IMG/VR virus record: IMGVR_UViG_3300042923_000569
Location: 62,001 to 126,000 of that record
Reading direction: 5' to 3' (one strand)
Length of the DNA: 64,000 nt
Position 1 is the stretch's first letter, and each line of letters begins with the position of its first letter. Below, in pieces: positions 1 to 6,280 of the stretch. The position numbers and the translations under genes were made by a program. The notes under the pieces were generated by a model. That model was given only the letters and a program-made list of their open reading frames with translations, was not told the origin of the DNA and searched no databases.

Positions 1-679
1 TAAGTTGAACGGTATTTAGTAATTTACCAAAATGTTCTACACCGTCGCCGTACATACCTTCCATTGCAGCAAGAGAATCGCTGTTTTTGGTTACTGCTTG
101 ACTAAATTCATTGATGCTCATAAATGCAGCACCCGAACCTTTACGTACTGTCAACATCCCGTTGGCTAACGTAACACCAGCACTGTTTAACTGATTATAC
201 ATTTGTAACTGCTGGTTTAAATATTCATAAACCATTGCACCTACTTGTACAATTTGCATAAATCCACTAGCAACTAATCCAATTGGCCCAGGTAATGCAC
301 CCAATGAACGTTGTAGTATTTTTGCAGATGTTCCAACTGAACCAACAACGTTCTGGATATTTCCATTATTACCTAACGCTGTTCTTCCGAGATTTGATGC
401 TTCTCCGAATAAATCTTTAAATGCATTCTTGAAGCTACTGCCGCCGCCACCAGAATTACGATTATTATTTCCATTATTTCTTCGATTACCGCGATTACCG
501 CCGTTATTACCAGAACCATTTCCATTGTTATTACCACCGCCTCCACCAGAACCATTTTTCTTTCCAGTGTTCTTTTTGACGTCGAGTAGTATTTCACGCA
601 TCGCACTTAAATTATCATTCATGGAAACACTTTGGTCTAACAATTGCTGTTGGATATAGTCGTTGCTTAATCCTGCCAT
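1..679 (-). CDS. 5' part of a large tail protein, probably tape-measure-like (runs off the left edge of the window)
   Basis: Absent from the ORF track because no stop lies in the window. ATG at 679 preceded by GAGGAAGA; open to position 1: MAGLSNDYIQQQLLDQ...(G/N-rich)...LGALPGPIGLVASGFMQIVQVGAMVYEYLNQQLQMYNQLNSAGV. The amphipathic Ala/Gly-rich helical pattern is typical of tape-measure proteins; minus-strand TATAAATA lies at ~728-735. Confidence 0.6.
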   Translation of the reverse strand, partial: MAGLSNDYIQQQLLDQSVSMNDNLSAMREILLDVKKNTGKKNGSGGGGGNNNGNGSGNNGGNRGNRRNNGNNNRNSGGGGSSFKNAFKDLFGEASNLGRTALGNNGNIQNVVGSVGTSAKILQRSLGALPGPIGLVASGFMQIVQVGAMVYEYLNQQLQMYNQLNSAGVTLANGMLTVRKGSGAAFMSINEFSQAVTKNSDSLAAMEGMYGDGVEHFGKLLNTVQL

Positions 680-692
680 GTGTTCTTCCTCA

Positions 693-735
693 TAAATAAT
701 CGTATACAAAATATATAGTATAGTCATATTTATAA
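693..735. promoter_or_regulatory. Overlapping divergent late promoters: TAAATA on + at 693-698 and TATAAATA on - at ~728-735
   Basis: T4 gp55-type late -10 boxes upstream of the divergent genes starting at 746 (+) and 679 (-). Confidence 0.55.
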
Positions 736-745
736 TGGAGTCGAT

Positions 746-1603
746 ATGAATAAGATGAACCCTTTATCAAAGTACACTAAAGTAGAAGTACTTTATACAA
801 AGTTGATAAGTAACAATGTTGTGAAATACAACGAAGGTGTTTTAGTAAATGACACTGTGGAATGTGGCGTTTGTGCACGTTCTGCACGAGATGAATTAAT
901 GTTCAATAACCCTGACGCACTAATGAATGGTGAAGCAGTATCTAGTGTTATTGAGAACTGCGTACCAAATATTGCAGACGCAAGAAAACTTTTTGTTCCA
1001 GATGTTGAACTACTATTGATTGCAATTAAATTAGCAACAAAAGAAACCGAATATCATATTGAAGTAGATTGTCCTGAATGTGGTCATCATGGTGCATTTG
1101 AACGTAACCTACAAGTACTATTAGATAGTGCTGAACTATTAGAAAAGCAACCAGAATTACTATTAGAAGATGTAGGTGGTCTACTTCTTAAATTCAGACC
1201 TCAAACATGGCAGGAATATAATACCTTTGGACAGAATATGTTCCAGCAACAAAAGAAAGCACAGATCCTAGAAAAACGTGATGATTTAACTGATGAACAG
1301 AAAATGGAAGTCTTTAGTCAAATCTTTGAAGAAATGACAAGATTGAGTTTTGATATGATTGTTTGTAATATTGATAGTGTTGAAACTGTAGACGGGAATG
1401 TGATTACTGAGAAGGAATTTATTGCAGAATGGTTGGGTGTACAGCCTTCATTTATTCTCAAACAAATTCGAGAAAAAGCAGATGAAGTCAATAATTGCGG
1501 AGTTTCGCATGAGATGGATGTAGGATGTTCTAAGTGTGATCATGAATGGACAATCGAAAATCTTCAATTTGACCCAAGCAATTTTTTCGTACAAAGCTTC
1601 TAA
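746..1603 (+). CDS. Baseplate hub assembly protein / tail assembly chaperone (T4 gp26-like)
   Basis: ARDELMFNNPDALMNG, D-x-E-LLLIAIK, CPEC and CSKC Zn motifs, C-terminal DPSNFF; GGAG RBS. Confidence 0.75.
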   Translation: MNKMNPLSKYTKVEVLYTKLISNNVVKYNEGVLVNDTVECGVCARSARDELMFNNPDALMNGEAVSSVIENCVPNIADARKLFVPDVELLLIAIKLATKETEYHIEVDCPECGHHGAFERNLQVLLDSAELLEKQPELLLEDVGGLLLKFRPQTWQEYNTFGQNMFQQQKKAQILEKRDDLTDEQKMEVFSQIFEEMTRLSFDMIVCNIDSVETVDGNVITEKEFIAEWLGVQPSFILKQIREKADEVNNCGVSHEMDVGCSKCDHEWTIENLQFDPSNFFVQSF

Positions 1604-1800
1604 TTTCTGAACCGGAAGAAATACGGAAAGAAATAGCAGACCTAAGATTGAACTCGGAAGATATTAAAAGTGGATTGATGGAGGTGTCAGTGTACATAGA
1701 GAACACTACATATGAAACGCTACTGAATATGCCTGTAACCGACAGAGATCTTCTTGTGAAGCAATATAATAAAAAGGTCAAAAAAGAAAATAAGAAATAA
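1582..1800 (+). CDS. -1 frame extension of the gp26-like gene (or a small separate ORF from ATG 1678)
   Basis: -1 frame open from 1573 to TAA 1798-1800 (FRTKLLISEPEEIRKEIADLRLNSEDIKSGLMEVSVYIENTTYETLLNMPVTDRDLLVKQYNKKVKKENKK). Slippery heptamer T TTT TTC at 1582-1588; a terminator follows immediately. Confidence 0.6.
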   Translation, partial: FFRTKLLISEPEEIRKEIADLRLNSEDIKSGLMEVSVYIENTTYETLLNMPVTDRDLLVKQYNKKVKKENKK

Positions 1801-1805
1801 TTAAG

Positions 1806-1830
1806 AACCAGCCATTGTGCTGGTTTTTTT
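1806..1830 (+). terminator. Rho-independent terminator
   Basis: AACCAGC-cattgt-GCTGGTT followed by a T-run, directly after the 1800 stop. Confidence 0.8.
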
Positions 1831-1849
1831 GTATCTAAATTATCTTAAC

Positions 1850-2513
1850 TCTTTAGATTTGCCATTCTTCGAATGTCAAAGAATTTTCGTTGTTCTGTAC
1901 ATCACTAACGTTCTGTACTGAATCAACTCAATTCAGATTTATATCTAATGCATCACTGTTAACGTTACACACTTTATACTGACGAGATTTGTTTCATTTA
2001 TCATCCCCCCACAGGGGAAAGACGTAAAAAAAGCACTTATAAAAGTGCCTAAATTTCTGACGATGATAGTCGTACTTTAATTGTATCGTAAATTTCTATT
2101 TTTCAATAGAACGCAAGCGGGTTGCTCTGTTTCTCGCTATTACGGTCTTATGCAACGGTCGTGGGCTTACCACACTCAGTTTTAAGTCTATACAATCAAA
2201 CTTAAAACCTATCAACTGAAAATGGACGGATTTATATTGTATAAAAACCATCGCATTATTTAACATCAGTTAAATTCCCTTAGCTTTTTGGTAGGGGCGA
2301 TTCCTATATATCTATCGAGGATGTTCTGTCAGCTTAGTGAACATCTTTATAGTGCCGTATTGCCGTGGGTGGTACAAACTATGCCATCTCCTAACGGGTG
2401 TCTTCTGCACTTCGAACTGCTTGAACTTCTCATCTATCCTCTACATTTTCGAGTGAATTAGGTTCTATTTTATCAGTACTTAACAGTACTGCCAAGCAGG
2501 GTTGTATTACTAC
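1850..2513 (-). ncRNA. Candidate large structured non-coding RNA (alternatively an RNA-primed replication origin)
   Basis: No ORF of 60 aa or more in ~790 bp. More than 10 hairpins and long-range stems. Directly downstream of a TGAAACA-N16-TATAAT promoter (2520-2548). Terminator-like hairpin plus U7 at 2050-2026 on the minus strand. Confidence 0.55.
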
Positions 2514-2519
2514 AATCAT

Positions 2520-2548
2520 ATTATACCACAAAAACGTTCACTGTTTCA
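2520..2548 (-). promoter_or_regulatory. Phage promoter TGAAACA-N16-TATAAT (extended -10 TGG)
   Basis: Minus strand reads TGAAACAgtgaacgtttttgtggTATAAT; same architecture as 4 other copies. Confidence 0.75.
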
Positions 2549-2556
2549 CTTTCTTG

Positions 2557-2562
2557 TAAATA
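2557..2562 (+). promoter_or_regulatory. Late promoter TAAATA
   Basis: ~28 nt upstream of ATG 2590; back-to-back with the 2520-2548 promoter. Confidence 0.55.
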
Positions 2563-2589
2563 CATAAAGTAAACGTTTTTGGAGTACAT

Positions 2590-3081
2590 ATGAAGAAAAG
2601 ATTAAAAAATCCTAAAGAGGCAGCAGCCTATAGGAACGAACTATTAAAAAAACAAAATGGTATTGATCCAATCATTGGTATTCGCATAACTAAACCCGTA
2701 CTTGATCACCAACACTCAGGTAATCAACATTGTCGTGAAGTACTTCAAAATGAAGTAAATGGATGGGAAGGTAGAGTAGTTAACTCATACCGTAGATGCC
2801 TTGGACATTTAACTGATAAACCAATACATGAAGTACTTAGAAATCTAGCAGACTATATTGAACGTAATGGTAATATACCAGAAGAAGAACAAGTTATTCA
2901 CCATACTGCACTTACAATTGATGTAAAGAAGTTTAAGAACCTACCCGCAGCACAACAATCCTCAATTCTAATTTCTTTTGGAGTAGAACCTGAGTCTAAT
3001 TCATCTAAAAGAGCTAATCAAGCACGGAAACTTATTAAGTCCGGTGATTTGAATATGCTACACATAAAAAAAGGAGCCTAA
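2590..3081 (+). CDS. Recombination endonuclease VII-like Holliday junction resolvase (T4 gp49 family)
   Basis: R..LL..QNG.DPI, PVLDHQH, R.VL...VNGWEG (His-Me finger D-H, N and E retained), LRNLADYIE. Confidence 0.75.
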   Translation: MKKRLKNPKEAAAYRNELLKKQNGIDPIIGIRITKPVLDHQHSGNQHCREVLQNEVNGWEGRVVNSYRRCLGHLTDKPIHEVLRNLADYIERNGNIPEEEQVIHHTALTIDVKKFKNLPAAQQSSILISFGVEPESNSSKRANQARKLIKSGDLNMLHIKKGA

Positions 3082-3095: not shown

Positions 3096-5237
3096 TTATA
3101 GGTCTAATACATCACAGAATTCCATAGTACTAAAACTATCTTCTTTCACAACACGAAGTATTGAGCTTGCTCTGCTTACTAATTCTTCACGGTGTGATAC
3201 AACAAAGATGTTTTTACCACGGACTGCACTTAAATCTTGAAGCATATGCCATGAACATTCAATACCACCGGTATCAAGTCCATTATCCAACAATTCATCA
3301 ACTAATAGTACATTGATTCCCTGATAAAGTGATTCATATGTGTCACGGAATGCTAAATTCAATGCAATAATAACACGAGTTCTTTCACCACGAGACAACT
3401 GTTTGAAATCATATGACTGTCCGTTAAGTTCAATGTCTACACTTAAGTCATTTAGGAATTCAACAGTATGTTGTGAGCCTGACTTATCAATCCAGTACTG
3501 CAATCTTGAATTCAAGAATGAAATATTCTGTTCAATGATACGTCGGCGAACAAATGAGTCTTTATTCATAAGTAGCTTAGCTAGATAATCTTGATGATCT
3601 GATAGTTTTACTAACTTATTGTATTCATCATAGTCAACATGTTGAATTGAGTTTGTTTTTAACGTCTCAATTTGCTCAAAGAATGGATTCTCTGAAGCCT
3701 GTTCACGTTCCAATGATGAAACTAAAGAATTAAATGAATGTTGTAGGTCACGAACCTCATCAGTACTAAAAGTCTCTTCATATTCTTTAATCTCTGTGTT
3801 TTCTAACTCGGTAAATGCAGACATTAGTTCGTCATCATAGATATTAATATCTTCAGCAGTACTTTTCTTGATTAGTTCTTCAAGTTTGTGTTCATGTAGC
3901 TTTGCTTCTGACAAAGTACTATAAAATGTCACTGGTTTAGCTGGCATTTCAAACAATTCCAAATGAGAAACTTCAAATTGTAGAGTTTGTAGCTCTCCAG
4001 TTAGTGTTTCAATCGTGGAAGTAATCTTTTGCACTTCATCTTCTGCTTTCTGCTTCATTACAGAATGATTATCATCATGTTCTAATGAATGTTTACACAA
4101 TGGACACTTACTTTCAGCAATTTCAGCTAGTTTCTGTTGTTCATTCTGCAAATAACCTTCCTGATGAGCAATTCGATCAGTAACCGTTTTAATTTGTTGC
4201 TCTTTGAACCGTTTGGTATTCAATGCTTCTTTAAGTACTTGCTCTTTAAAAACCCAATTTGCTAATTCTTCGTGTAATGCTAACTCGGATGCAATATCGA
4301 ACTTAGAAAGTTCATCAATACTGTTAAGTACTTGTACTTTTTTGGTATGTAATGCGTTAGAATACTCTTCATGCTTAACTGCAAGTTGTGCAACTCGATT
4401 TTCAAGGTTAATACGGTTATTATTGTGTTTAATTGCTTCTTCCATTAATGAAGCTTGTGCAAATAATACATCAAAATCAATATCTTCATAATCACCTAAG
4501 CTTTGAATTAAATCATTGATAGTTTTAGCTTTCTTCTGTTCAAATTCATTAGCTCTAGTCTGTAAAGACTCAATACTTTGAACGATACGCTTGTTTGATT
4601 CAGTAATAGTTTCAATTTTGAACTTTTCCTGATCTGCAAGACGTTTAGTTTCACGGTACATATCTTTAAGTAGAGTAGCTTTCTCGGTTAGTTGGGTAAT
4701 ACCAAGTAGTTCTTCAATCATTTCACGTTGTTTCTGTTGTGAAAGTGATAAGAAAGGTTCTACGTTAGCATTAAGTACTACAATATGTTCAAAGAGTAAT
4801 TGTGATATACCTAGAATCTCATTTAAGTCTTCTTGGGTATCTTTCTTTTCCCCACGAGATTCATCTGCTACTGCTTTCCCATCTTCTAGTGTTAAGAAAT
4901 TAAAAAACGTGGGAGATCTCCCACGTTCAATTCTATATTCAACACCATCTTTCTCGAAATCAATCGTTACTTCACAATTCTTGCCGTTAATCTTGTTTAC
5001 TAGATTAGGGATCTTAATATCATTACTGATACTCTTACCATATAACCCATAAACAATACCTTGAATGATGGCAGACTTACCAACACCATTTCTGCGACCC
5101 GCCGCATCATCACCTACTGATGCATCATTGTTTTGACCTAGTACTAACGCTAGGTCAGTACTATCTAGGTCTAAAACTTGGGGTGCATTACCAAAAGAAA
5201 AGAAATTACGCATTGAAATACGTTTAATAGATAGCAT
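3096..5237 (-). CDS. Recombination endonuclease ATPase subunit (T4 gp46 / SbcC / Rad50-like)
   Basis: Walker A NGVGKS, coiled coils with CPLC zinc hook, signature LSRGE, Walker B LLVDELLD, H-loop VSH. Confidence 0.95.
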   Translation of the reverse strand: MLSIKRISMRNFFSFGNAPQVLDLDSTDLALVLGQNNDASVGDDAAGRRNGVGKSAIIQGIVYGLYGKSISNDIKIPNLVNKINGKNCEVTIDFEKDGVEYRIERGRSPTFFNFLTLEDGKAVADESRGEKKDTQEDLNEILGISQLLFEHIVVLNANVEPFLSLSQQKQREMIEELLGITQLTEKATLLKDMYRETKRLADQEKFKIETITESNKRIVQSIESLQTRANEFEQKKAKTINDLIQSLGDYEDIDFDVLFAQASLMEEAIKHNNNRINLENRVAQLAVKHEEYSNALHTKKVQVLNSIDELSKFDIASELALHEELANWVFKEQVLKEALNTKRFKEQQIKTVTDRIAHQEGYLQNEQQKLAEIAESKCPLCKHSLEHDDNHSVMKQKAEDEVQKITSTIETLTGELQTLQFEVSHLELFEMPAKPVTFYSTLSEAKLHEHKLEELIKKSTAEDINIYDDELMSAFTELENTEIKEYEETFSTDEVRDLQHSFNSLVSSLEREQASENPFFEQIETLKTNSIQHVDYDEYNKLVKLSDHQDYLAKLLMNKDSFVRRRIIEQNISFLNSRLQYWIDKSGSQHTVEFLNDLSVDIELNGQSYDFKQLSRGERTRVIIALNLAFRDTYESLYQGINVLLVDELLDNGLDTGGIECSWHMLQDLSAVRGKNIFVVSHREELVSRASSILRVVKEDSFSTMEFCDVLDL

Positions 5238-5248
5238 CCTGCCTCCAA

Positions 5249-6280
5249 TTATAGTGATAGATAAAGTTGAATCAAAAGTTCATTGTCGATAACGTTAGAT
5301 TTATTCTCTTTTATTTGAGCAATAACAATTTCATCAACTGTTTCAGTACCTGCTGAGAAATCTTCACCAGTAAAGTTGTTCTCTACTGCTTTCTTGCCTG
5401 GAATAATGTTAAATTCACGAATCTTATACAATTTGGTAAAAGTTTCACGAATAAAACCAATTTCGTCCATAGTTACCGGAATATCAATCTGAACTTTAGC
5501 AATTACATTGTCTTCAAGGTAATATGTAGGTTCAGATAGTAATTCTGATAGTGTAAATGTTCTGTAACGAGGTGCACCGGGCCACATTTTGAATTCTGGC
5601 TCTGAACCATGATCTAAGAACATAATACCCCTTGCATCATCCCAAGTATCTGAGAAGTTATGAGGGAAACAGTTTCCTGTGTACAGAATTTTAGTACCTT
5701 TTGACGTTACTTTAGCTTGTCTCTTGTGGAAGTGACCACTAAAGACATATTCACATCCATTAAACGAATCTTCCGTTTCTTTACCATGATCAGGCATCTC
5801 GACCATCTTGTTTAAAAGATAACCGGGAAGTTCTAAGTGTCCAAACACGTATTTTGCACGCAAAGAAGGAAGTTGTTTGTATTCATCATCAATTAGGAAT
5901 GGAATAAACGCACAATCATCAATGGATTCAATGTTATTGATAAAATGAATCTTATCAAACACTCTTGCCATATTAATACTTGTTACATCACGTTTATTTT
6001 TATGATACATGTCATGGTTACCTACTAAAAAGTAGGTAATATCGAATGAATCATTTAGTAATTGCATGATTTGAAGACCGAAGTCTAATGTATGAATGTT
6101 AATATTACTACGATTGTGGAAGAAATCACCCATAAAAATACAGGTTCTGATATTTCTTTCATTTGCTTCACTGATCATGAATTTAACAAATTCAAAACAA
6201 TCAGTATTGTGCTCCCTACTGTTATTCTTTAAACCTAAGTGAATATCAGTAAAAATAATAGCTTTATCAAACAGTGCCAT
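5249..6280 (-). CDS. Recombination endonuclease nuclease subunit (T4 gp47 / SbcD / Mre11-like)
   Basis: Metallophosphoesterase motifs DIH, GDFFH, GNHD, GHFH; adjacent to the gp46-like gene. Confidence 0.95.
   Translation of the reverse strand: MALFDKAIIFTDIHLGLKNNSREHNTDCFEFVKFMISEANERNIRTCIFMGDFFHNRSNINIHTLDFGLQIMQLLNDSFDITYFLVGNHDMYHKNKRDVTSINMARVFDKIHFINNIESIDDCAFIPFLIDDEYKQLPSLRAKYVFGHLELPGYLLNKMVEMPDHGKETEDSFNGCEYVFSGHFHKRQAKVTSKGTKILYTGNCFPHNFSDTWDDARGIMFLDHGSEPEFKMWPGAPRYRTFTLSELLSEPTYYLEDNVIAKVQIDIPVTMDEIGFIRETFTKLYKIREFNIIPGKKAVENNFTGEDFSAGTETVDEIVIAQIKENKSNVIDNELLIQLYLSL

What the first reader, a model, noticed from the sequence alone, without database searches (positions are those of the whole stretch)
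1570..1800. Predicted programmed -1 ribosomal frameshift in the gp26-like gene (G/GT chaperone-like architecture)
Seen in sequence: the 285-aa ORF ends ...AAT TTT TTC GTA CAA AGC TTC TAA, containing a canonical X_XXY_YYZ heptamer, T TTT TTC (1582-1588). The -1 frame opens just before it (stop at 1570-1572) and stays open for 70 codons past the heptamer to TAA 1798-1800, followed by the terminator. The first ATG in that frame is at 1678 with a weak RBS, yet the 30 preceding codons look like a helical protein. A frameshift would give a ~351-aa product. Established: lambda G/GT and many long-tailed phages make tape-measure chaperones by -1 frameshifting. Here the gene is divergent from a probable tape-measure gene. 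Inference: the 'baseplate hub gp26' gene of this phage is a frameshifting tail chaperone.
Basis: partly seen in the sequence, partly recalled or inferred. Interest (0 to 1): 0.75.

Follow-up and report, generated by a model that had tools for sequence, protein, structure and literature searches.

The report
Frameshifted long form of gp26 chaperone
The single gp26-type tail-hub chaperone gene of this giant phage almost certainly makes a short and a longer protein by a programmed -1 ribosome slip on UUUUUUC, a job phage T4 does with two genes (26 and 51); it is a well-supported but unsurprising case of a known trick.

Summary
The gp26-like ORF (746-1603, 285 aa, Pfam T4_baseplate) carries T_TTT_TTC at 1582-1588. 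The -1 frame runs 70 codons further to TAA at 1798-1800, and a terminator follows at 1803-1828.

- All 38 related loci examined (gp26 identity down to 24%; hosts from Enterobacteria to Agrobacterium, Pseudomonas and Salicola) keep the heptamer in register and a 69-80 codon -1 extension.
- The extension is conserved as protein from the slip site onward. The 0-frame stop moves about and no start codon is conserved.
- The window's complete genome has only one gene of this family.
- Uncultured relatives without the slip site carry the extension in frame, always beside a second, shorter paralogue. That is T4's two-gene arrangement (gp26 short, gp51 long).
- The extension resembles the gp51 C-terminal tail, but only weakly.

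Predicted products are 285 aa and 351 aa.

No stimulatory RNA structure was found, and there is no expression evidence. Transcriptional slippage is not excluded.

Tail-chaperone frameshifting is classical, and a 2022 paper I could not read identified the T4-like tail chaperone genes. I therefore call this a new member of a known kind. None of the 21 annotated GenBank loci viewed marks it.

The parts
737..740 (+). Shine-Dalgarno-like GGAG, 5 nt upstream of the gp26 ATG
   Evidence: Read directly from the sequence. No comparable motif precedes any start codon in the -1 ORF.
746..1603 (+). gp26-like gene in the 0 frame: the 285-aa short form (T4_baseplate family, hub assembly chaperone type)
   Evidence: PF12322 scores 81.4 bits against a cut-off of 24.5, and phrog_150 'baseplate hub' also matches. 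The protein is 83-84% identical to CBB_250 and GAP32_243. It is the only PF12322 gene in the 357,873-bp genome.
1582..1588 (+). Slippery heptamer T_TTT_TTC (U_UUU_UUC), codons 280-281 (Phe-Phe) plus the last base of codon 279
   Evidence: The heptamer is in register in all 38 related loci: T_TTT_TTC everywhere except the two Stenotrophomonas phages (CM1, RAS14), which have T_TTT_TTT. T4 gp26 keeps the Phe-Phe pair but encodes it as TTC TTT, which is not slippery.
1588..1800 (+). -1 frame extension: 70 codons plus TAA, giving a C-terminal helical domain that resembles Gp51_C in the 351-aa long form
   Evidence: Open frame. Conserved as protein from the slip site. Codon-position variability is 0.37/0.23/0.56, and there are 0 stops against 50 and 52 in the other two frames. 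It matches phrog_18291. In-frame homologues exist. Its likeness to the gp51 tail is weak.
1601..1603 (+). 0-frame stop codon (TAA), which ends the short form four codons after the heptamer
   Evidence: In relatives the 0-frame stop lies 1 to 15 codons after Phe-Phe.
1803..1836 (+). Intrinsic-terminator-like hairpin and T-run, placed after the -1 stop rather than after the 0-frame stop
   Evidence: 10-bp stem at 1803-1828 followed by a T-run.
1..679 (-). Context: the 5' part of a divergent 733-aa virion structural protein gene, a possible tape measure
   Evidence: Full length is L039:979-3180 on the minus strand. It matches phrog_14121 (E = 0) but no tape-measure Pfam family, and it has no likeness to T4 gp29. 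The genome has no PF25671 match. The CBB homologue CBB_251 gave 29 peptides in virions (PMC5259590). Some GenBank records call it a tape measure.

Best explanation
Proposed mechanism. Most ribosomes read 746-1603 and release a 285-aa gp26-type protein, the short form. A minority slip back one base on U_UUU_UUC (1582-1588). The two tRNA-Phe re-pair from UUU-UUC to UUU-UUU. Decoding resumes at CGU (1588) and runs to UAA (1798), giving a 351-aa long form. The long form is the first 281 residues of gp26 plus a 70-residue helical tail. The slip frequency sets a fixed short-to-long ratio from one gene and one transcript, which ends at the terminator at 1803-1828.

Proposed role. The pair is the single-gene equivalent of T4 gp26 (short) plus gp51 (the same domain with a C-terminal tail). 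Both T4 proteins are hub assembly chaperones that are not part of the virion. In genetic logic the pair also matches lambda G/GT and P2 E/E+E'.

Shown here: the heptamer, the open -1 frame, their deep conservation, the lack of any conserved start codon, the single gene copy, and the existence of in-frame and two-gene alternatives in relatives.

Inferred: that slipping occurs, that it is ribosomal rather than transcriptional, its efficiency, and the chaperone role of both forms.
For: 1. Anatomy..

2. Conservation of the slip site. All 38 loci keep T_TTT_TT[C/T] in register, with gp26 identity falling to 24%. The preceding codon encodes N, S, R, H, Y or D but always ends in T. Elsewhere in these genes such codons end in T 73% of the time and Phe is TTT 69% of the time.

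3. Coding signature in the -1 frame upstream of any start. Pairwise variability by codon position is 0.37/0.23/0.56 for codons 1-30 and 0.42/0.22/0.62 for codons 14-30. There are 0 stops, against 50 and 52 in the other frames.

4. No conserved start. Start codons are scattered, nearly all without a Shine-Dalgarno motif, and PA5oct has none in 36 codons.

5. Short forms only, tails vary. 119 of 120 homologue clusters end with Phe-Phe plus a tail of 1-15 residues. None is longer than 298 aa.

6. Wider search with the extension profile. It finds 308 cluster representatives. Of 33 small-ORF calls that begin upstream of the extension, 31 read FF just before it, which means the T6 run is present. 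Eight hits are in-frame gp26-plus-extension proteins of 324-351 aa that pass the PF12322 cut-off and have a non-slippery xFR junction.

7. Two-gene alternative. In all four in-frame cases with enough flanking sequence, a second, shorter PF12322 paralogue sits immediately upstream.

8. Single copy. The window's complete genome has one PF12322 gene.

9. Link to T4. T4 gp51 is PF12322 plus a tail. Its homologues carry PF28602 Gp51_C. The extension profile against the gp51 tails gives hhalign P = 3e-4. Reciprocal HMM hits are weak. 23 of the 100 nearest Atlas hits belong to the set of clusters in which some members carry Gp51_C, the best at score 0.93. MAFFT aligns the two in register, with an invariant F and the R of an ER motif.

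10. Structure. An AlphaFold model of an in-frame relative (pLDDT 96, pTM 0.91) folds the extension as four helices.

11. Virion proteomics. The CBB table lists the neighbour CBB_251 but not CBB_250 or CBB_249.
Against: - No protein, ribosome-profiling or RNA evidence exists for this phage or any relative that I could find. No RNA run holds the locus.
- No conserved downstream stimulatory structure was found. RNAalifold gives only a -0.87 kcal/mol pairing of the heptamer with GAAGAAA. The CTTCT/AGAAG stem shows no covariation. The fold z-score is -0.36.
- The Phe-Phe pair is also a conserved protein motif, present even in T4. Part of the heptamer's conservation is therefore due to the protein.
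- Several relatives have an ATG at or near the 0-frame stop (Kaldavass, BF, 121Q, CBB). Independent or coupled initiation of a small protein is possible in those genomes.
- The likeness to Gp51_C is weak. The extension HMM against T4 gp51 alone gives E = 0.26, and hhalign probability is 19-39%.
- There is no sequence or fold likeness to lambda-type chaperones.
Confidence: 0.85

Rival explanations
1. The downstream ORF is a separate small gene (about 40-60 aa). It is translated on its own or by termination-reinitiation coupling, which is how every GenBank record annotates it. No frameshift occurs.
For: Some relatives have an ATG overlapping or close to the gp26 stop: TAATG in Kaldavass, BF and 121Q, and an ATG 20 nt downstream in CBB and GAP32. 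PHROG 18291 models a 59-aa protein. An ATG at codon 31 is present in most RaK2-like members.
Against: - No start position is conserved, and nearly all candidate starts lack a Shine-Dalgarno motif. PA5oct has no ATG, GTG or TTG in 36 codons. RaK2 has only codon 31, and L027 and L029 lack even that.
- Protein-level conservation and third-position wobble extend upstream of every candidate start, right to the heptamer.
- In relatives without the heptamer the same domain is covalently fused to gp26.
- The heptamer's synonymous positions are frozen.
Confidence: 0.06
2. The same two proteins are made, but by transcriptional slippage. RNA polymerase adds one U at the T6 run, and the ribosome then reads the altered mRNA normally.
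For: The protein product would be identical, so comparative genomics cannot tell the two mechanisms apart. A homopolymer run is conserved. No ribosomal stimulator was found.
Against: From my own knowledge, six T is short for bacterial RNA polymerase slippage, which usually needs a run of about 8-9. The run is always in exact X_XXY_YYZ register, and it is extended to exactly six or seven by a constrained NNT codon, as ribosomal tandem slippage requires. I could lay only assembled contigs, which drop rare variants, so this was not tested directly.
Confidence: 0.07
3. The arrangement is a chance overlap or a decaying gene, that is, a frameshift mutation in what was once a 351-aa gene, or a sequencing error.
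For: In-frame versions of 324-351 aa exist in other lineages. One base more or fewer would fuse the two frames.
Against: The same arrangement occurs in 38 loci and in at least 31 further clusters at 50% identity, across very different hosts. Four independent assemblies agree on T6. Purifying selection is visible in the -1 frame. None of the 120 closest homologue clusters is fused.
Confidence: 0.01

Closest known systems
Phage T4 gp26 and gp51 (hub assembly chaperones; Pfam PF12322, with PF28602 Gp51_C in gp51)
   Same: The N-terminal domain is the same family, with the conserved CxxC pairs and the C-terminal Phe-Phe. There is one short form ending just after Phe-Phe and one long form with an added C-terminal tail. 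That tail aligns in register with the extension here.
   Different: T4 uses two divergently transcribed paralogous genes, and its Phe-Phe is encoded TTC TTT, which is not slippery. Here one gene plus a -1 slip supplies both forms, and the two share an identical N-terminal body. The extension is about 20 residues longer than the gp51 tail. Homology of the tails is only weakly supported.
Lambda gpG/gpGT tail assembly chaperones (-1 slip at G_GGA_AAG; Levin 1993 and Xu 2004, 2013, as cited in PMC5009743)
   Same: Two products share an N-terminus. [quoted passage not shown] By analogy neither is in the virion. Lambda also needs no strong RNA stimulator (my recollection).
   Different: There is no detectable sequence or fold similarity. 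The protein here is twice the size of gpG and has zinc-ribbon-like CxxC motifs. The gene is not between the tube and tape-measure genes; it is divergent from a 733-aa virion protein of unproven identity. The heptamer is different.
Phage P2 gpE/gpE+E' (myovirus tail chaperone pair made by a -1 frameshift)
   Same: It is a contractile-tail phage with the same genetic logic. A language-model search lists a Phage_P2_GpE cluster among the more distant look-alikes of the extension (score 0.89). This is a lead only.
   Different: No HMM-level match was found, and the proteins are much smaller. The relationship was not tested further.
Tandem short-plus-long PF12322 gene pairs in uncultured phages (L036, L040, L041, L043)
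   Same: Same family and same extension domain on the long member.
   Different: The extension is in frame with an xFR junction, so no slip is needed. A separate gene encodes the short form. One short paralogue (in L036) still has TTTTTTC, but the -1 frame closes after one codon.
T7 gene 10A/10B (-1 slip on Phe codons at G_GUU_UUC)
   Same: The slip occurs on tRNA-Phe at a U-run near the end of a structural-module gene. PMC12846349 cites poly-T signals in T7 and in 'TAC-N genes of T4-like phages'.
   Different: It concerns a capsid protein rather than a chaperone, and the heptamer is different. The details given here are from my memory.

Membership tests
Programmed -1 ribosomal frameshift site (tandem-slippage type) | X_XXY_YYZ heptamer in register with the 0 frame | tested here: met
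   T_TTT_TTC lies at 1582-1588. It is in register in all 38 related loci.
Programmed -1 ribosomal frameshift site (tandem-slippage type) | The -1 ORF begins at the site and is conserved as protein from there, with no initiation signal of its own | tested here: met
   the -1 frame shows a coding signature and no stops, start codons are scattered, and nearly all candidate starts lack a Shine-Dalgarno motif.
Programmed -1 ribosomal frameshift site (tandem-slippage type) | Stimulatory element (downstream hairpin or pseudoknot, or an upstream SD-like sequence) | tested here: not met
   No conserved structure was found and the z-score is -0.36. No SD-like motif is visible upstream. Pseudoknots cannot be predicted with these tools. 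This feature is not obligatory for phage chaperone sites.
Programmed -1 ribosomal frameshift site (tandem-slippage type) | A trans-frame protein is actually produced | not testable with these tools
   No RNA or proteomic data cover the locus.
T4 gp26/gp51 family (PF12322 T4_baseplate, hub assembly chaperones) | PF12322 domain above the curated cut-off | tested here: met
   81.4 bits against 24.5, covering residues 55-281.
T4 gp26/gp51 family (PF12322 T4_baseplate, hub assembly chaperones) | Conserved CxxC pairs and C-terminal Phe-Phe shared with T4 gp26 | tested here: met
   C109, C112, C261, C264, F280 and F281 are invariant in 14 sequences that include T4.
T4 gp26/gp51 family (PF12322 T4_baseplate, hub assembly chaperones) | The long form carries the Gp51_C domain (PF28602) | tested here: inconclusive
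   The model is not in the local library. Indirect evidence: hhalign P = 3e-4 with probability 19-39%, weak reciprocal HMM hits, Atlas score 0.93 and an alignment in register.
T4 gp26/gp51 family (PF12322 T4_baseplate, hub assembly chaperones) | Needed for hub or tail assembly and absent from the virion | not testable with these tools
   The only indication is that the homologue CBB_250 is absent from the CBB virion peptide table.
Lambda-type tail assembly chaperones (G/GT; TAC-N/TAC-NC) | Short and long forms share an N-terminus, with the long form made by a -1 slip near the 3' end | tested here: met
   Met in silico only; see the frameshift rows above.
Lambda-type tail assembly chaperones (G/GT; TAC-N/TAC-NC) | Gene lies between the tail tube and tape-measure genes and is co-oriented with them | tested here: not met
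   The gene is divergent from a 733-aa virion protein that is followed by the portal gene. Its identity as a tape measure is unproven.
Lambda-type tail assembly chaperones (G/GT; TAC-N/TAC-NC) | Sequence or fold similarity to known tail assembly chaperone families or structures | tested here: not met
   No chaperone Pfam hit. No PDB sequence hit. The best Foldseek PDB hit for a pLDDT-96 model of an in-frame relative has E = 0.16 and TM no higher than 0.13.
Lambda-type tail assembly chaperones (G/GT; TAC-N/TAC-NC) | The short part binds the tape measure and the extension binds the tube protein | not tested
   No complex prediction was run, and the binding partners are unknown.

The most novel reading that the evidence does not exclude
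The -1 frameshift in PF12322 (gp26/gp51-type) genes may not have been described at this breadth. If so, this one protein family shows three interchangeable ways of making a short and a long chaperone: recoding in jumbo phages of many hosts, tandem paralogues in uncultured lineages, and divergent paralogues in T4. That would give a natural series in which gene duplication replaced recoding, or the reverse. It would also explain the long-puzzling 'catalytic' gp51 as the TAC-NC-type long form.
Probability: 0.3. Interest if true: 0.6.

Novelty: new member of a known kind. Interest (0 to 1): 0.4.

Why it matters
Practical value. The gp26 region is mis-annotated as two genes, or as one gene plus empty space, in every one of the 21 annotated GenBank loci I viewed among RaK2-, CBB-, GAP32-, 121Q-, PA5oct- and Atu_ph07-type jumbo phages. 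Several of these are therapy or biocontrol candidates. A joined CDS with ribosomal slippage should be added to those records.

Conceptual value. The finding ties the T4 gp26/gp51 pair to the general rule that long-tailed phages need a short and a long chaperone in a fixed ratio. It also offers cultivable systems (CBB, GAP32, 121Q, RaK2) in which that ratio can be changed by editing a single heptamer. This is easier than in T4, where two genes are involved.

It is not a new mechanism.

Tried and rejected
- RNA stimulators. RNAalifold on 18 sequences gave only a pairing of the heptamer with GAAGAAA at -0.87 kcal/mol, with no compensatory changes. A hand-proposed CTTCT/AGAAG stem did no better than shuffles. 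The single-sequence fold had z = -0.36.
- Link to T4 gp51. The extension HMM against T4 gp51 alone was not significant (E = 0.26). Only profile-profile and family-wide searches gave weak support.
- Libraries. PF28602 is not in the local Pfam copy. NCBIfam gave nothing. A Pfam scan of 66 family members gave no DUF6760, GpE or tail-chaperone hits.
- Tape measure. The neighbour has no tape-measure Pfam family and no likeness to T4 gp29. The genome has no PF25671 match.
- Late promoter. TATAAATA occurs once near the locus (727-734, minus strand) but is not enriched in the window, with 4 found against 9 expected. I make no promoter claim.
- Expression data. No RNA run holds the locus. Only assembled contigs could be laid, so rare transcript variants are invisible.
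- Searches that failed. The search for related loci failed with the 14-sequence alignment and found nothing for the Vibrio query.
Foldseek against PDB and Swiss-Prot AFDB found no fold match.
- Literature. The full text of Vladimirov et al. 2022 is not held.
Full report
**What is there.** The window comes from a complete, uncultivated jumbo myovirus genome of 357,873 bp with terminal repeats. Its nearest cultured relatives are Pectobacterium phage CBB and Cronobacter phage GAP32. The ORF at 746-1603 (+) encodes a 285-aa protein with a GGAG ribosome-binding site at 737-740. It belongs to Pfam PF12322 T4_baseplate (81.4 bits against a cut-off of 24.5) and to PHROG 150 'baseplate hub'. Its last codons are AAT TTT TTC GTA CAA AGC TTC TAA, so T_TTT_TTC lies at 1582-1588 in X_XXY_YYZ register. 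The -1 frame has a TGA at 1570-1572 and is then open to TAA at 1798-1800. A hairpin-plus-T-run terminator follows at 1803-1828. A -1 slip would join residues 1-281 to 70 further residues, giving 351 aa.

**Chance and artefact.** The window has 25 TTTTTT[C/T] sites, and the -1 frame after them stays open for a median of 3 codons. Only the site at 1582 sits at the end of a long ORF and opens at least 50 codons in the -1 frame. About 20 public runs, mostly metagenomes from soil, food, plant and insect-gut samples, hold near-identical DNA. Contigs from four of them cover the T-run with no indel.

**Conservation of the slip site.** I examined 38 loci. They comprise the RaK2, 121Q/PBECO4, Munch, EJP2, CBB/GAP32, BF/pEa and Kaldavass/Hallingskeid groups, Vibrio phage 2.275.O, Agrobacterium Atu_ph07, Sinorhizobium Phosso, Pseudomonas PA5oct and PAC2, Salicola SCTP-2, Stenotrophomonas CM1 and RAS14, and IMG/VR contigs. 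gp26 identity falls to 24%.
- Every locus has T_TTT_TTC in register; the two Stenotrophomonas phages, CM1 and RAS14, have T_TTT_TTT instead.
- Every locus has a -1 extension of 69-80 codons, so the predicted fusion is 346-355 aa (380 aa in SCTP-2).
- Among 24 non-redundant genes, the codon before Phe-Phe encodes six different amino acids but always ends in T. Phe-Phe is TTT TTC in 23 and TTT TTT in one.
- Elsewhere in these genes NNY codons end in T 73% of the time and Phe is TTT 69% of the time.
- Phe-Phe is itself a conserved protein motif, present even in T4 gp26. T4 encodes it as TTC TTT, which cannot slip, and goes straight on to gene 25.

**Conservation of the -1 frame.** After the heptamer the 0-frame tail is short, variable in length and poorly conserved. 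It is 1-15 residues long in 119 of 120 homologue clusters, and none of those clusters exceeds 298 aa. The -1 frame is conserved from the first codon: FFR-x-x-LL-...-P-E-E-I.... In 17 RaK2-like genes, pairwise nucleotide differences by -1-frame codon position are 0.37/0.23/0.56 over codons 1-30. Over codons 14-30 they are 0.42/0.22/0.62. That stretch lies beyond every 0-frame stop and, in several genomes, before any start codon. The -1 frame has no stop there, against 50 and 52 in the other two frames.

**No conserved start.** Start codons in the -1 frame are scattered at codons 2, 3, 5, 6, 13, 15, 16, 19, 21, 31 and others. Nearly all lack a Shine-Dalgarno motif. PA5oct has none in 36 codons and RaK2 has only codon 31. 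This explains why annotators placed the 'small gene' at different positions, or left it out, in the 21 annotated GenBank loci I viewed. None of those records carries a joined CDS.

**Natural controls.** A profile of the extension, searched against 1.84 billion cluster representatives, found 308 proteins. Among the best 150:
- 109 are small-ORF calls that begin at assorted positions inside the extension.
- 33 begin upstream of the extension, and 31 of those read FF just before it, which means the T6 run is present.
- 8 are proteins of 324-351 aa in which a bona fide PF12322 domain is joined in frame to the extension through a non-slippery xFR junction.

In all four in-frame cases with enough flanking sequence (L036, L040, L041, L043), a second, shorter PF12322 paralogue without the extension lies immediately upstream. 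So lineages that lack the slip site encode the short and long forms as two genes. Lineages with one gene have the slip site, and the window's own genome has exactly one PF12322 gene. This mutual exclusivity is the strongest argument that both forms are needed and that the slip supplies the long one.

**Relation to T4.** T4 gp51 is a paralogue of gp26: PF12322 over residues 1-201 plus a tail of about 48 residues. Its homologues carry the newer Pfam family PF28602 Gp51_C. The evidence linking that tail to the extension is as follows.
- Profile-profile comparison of the extension (102 sequences) with the gp51 tails (92 sequences) gives P = 3e-4 at probability 19-39%, aligning the last 35 columns.
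- Reciprocal HMM searches give weak hits: 19 of 92 and 5 of 150 at E <= 0.01.
- A language-model search puts 23 of the extension's 100 nearest Atlas hits in the set of clusters in which some members carry Gp51_C; the best of these scores 0.93.
- MAFFT aligns the two in register (F-R/K..LL..P-D/E-E-I/V ... M-x-P-x-E-R ... I-E-K), with two deletions in gp51.

I regard homology as probable but not proven. The extension HMM against T4 gp51 alone was not significant.

**Literature.** gp26 and gp51 are listed as hub assembly chaperones in PMC3004832. Vladimirov et al. 2022 (Virology 566:9) is not held. PMC10885494 cites it as showing that some T4-like phages carry a short gene and a long fusion gene instead of frameshifting. 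PMC12846349 cites it for poly-T slippery signals in 'TAC-N genes of T4-like phages'. The concept, and perhaps this very site, is therefore probably in print.

**Structure.** The trans-frame protein cannot be submitted to the folding tool, so I modelled an in-frame relative (P0176, 346 aa) with a 66-row alignment. The model has mean pLDDT 96 and pTM 0.91. The extension forms helices at 266-275, 279-306, 313-317 and 321-341. Foldseek found no similar fold in the PDB (best E = 0.16, TM no higher than 0.13) or in Swiss-Prot AFDB. A profile search of PDB sequences found nothing. The family is therefore not a structural relative of the solved lambda-type chaperones. The resemblance to G/GT is one of genetic logic only.

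**Gaps.**
- No conserved stimulatory RNA structure was found. Pseudoknots were not assessable.
- There is no expression evidence.
- Ribosomal and transcriptional slippage give the same protein. I favour the ribosome because the run is only six T and is in strict tandem-slippage register. This rests on general knowledge, not on a test.
- The divergent neighbour is a 733-aa virion protein (29 peptides in CBB). It has no demonstrable tape-measure signature. The genome has no T4-type gp29 match either, so the neighbour remains the best tape-measure candidate.

**Verdict.** This is a deeply conserved, unannotated -1 frameshift that makes the gp51-like long form of a gp26-type chaperone from a single gene. 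It is a new member of a known kind. Interest is moderate: 0.4.

Noticed in passing
window 1830-2589: A stretch of about 760 nt between the terminator and the endonuclease VII-like gene has no convincing ORF, yet it is conserved at the DNA level in relatives (76-81% identity). It has no tRNA and no Rfam match above threshold. A sub-threshold STnc370 match at 1796-1859 on the minus strand (35.7 bits against 54) is essentially the terminator hairpin. Relatives annotate assorted tiny ORFs here.
   Followed up: partly
window 1856-1891 (31-mer at 1859-1889): A short element has a second exact copy at G000:C1:337981-338011. In public assemblies many contigs end in it, and summed word depth there rises to 1,454 in run X9 against 35 for the flanks. 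It behaves like a repeat that breaks assemblies.
   Followed up: partly
L036:1270-1290 (uncultured phage contig): The short PF12322 paralogue of a two-gene lineage still ends ...AAT TTT TTC ACT GA.., so it carries the same heptamer. However, the -1 frame closes after one codon. This may be a relic of a former slip site.
   Followed up: no
relatives of window 746-1603 (Yersinia phages fHe-Yen9-03 and fHe-Yen9-04): The gp26 homologue is annotated 'Lead, cadmium, zinc and mercury transporting ATPase'. JGI names others 'ribosomal protein S27E' or 'glutaredoxin'. These are almost certainly mis-annotations triggered by the CxxC zinc-ribbon-like motifs.
   Followed up: no
window 1588-1797; Atlas clusters: More distant language-model look-alikes of the extension include bacterial DUF6760 proteins (score 0.90) and a Phage_P2_GpE cluster (0.89). 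A bacterial cluster combines PF12322 with DUF6760. This hints that the short/long chaperone module extends to P2-like phages or to contractile injection systems. No HMM-level support was found.
   Followed up: partly
window 430-560 (minus strand): The N-terminal part of the 733-aa virion protein contains a long Gly/Asn/Arg-rich low-complexity tract (GGGGGNNNGNGSGNNGGNRGNRRNNGNNNRNSGGGG), seen.
   Followed up: no
window 2590-3081, 3096-5237 (minus strand), 5249-6280 (minus strand): Downstream genes correspond to what relatives annotate as endonuclease VII (gp49-like) and the recombination endonuclease subunits gp46 and gp47. The local Pfam scan gave no significant hit for the 163-aa endonuclease VII-like protein.
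   Followed up: no
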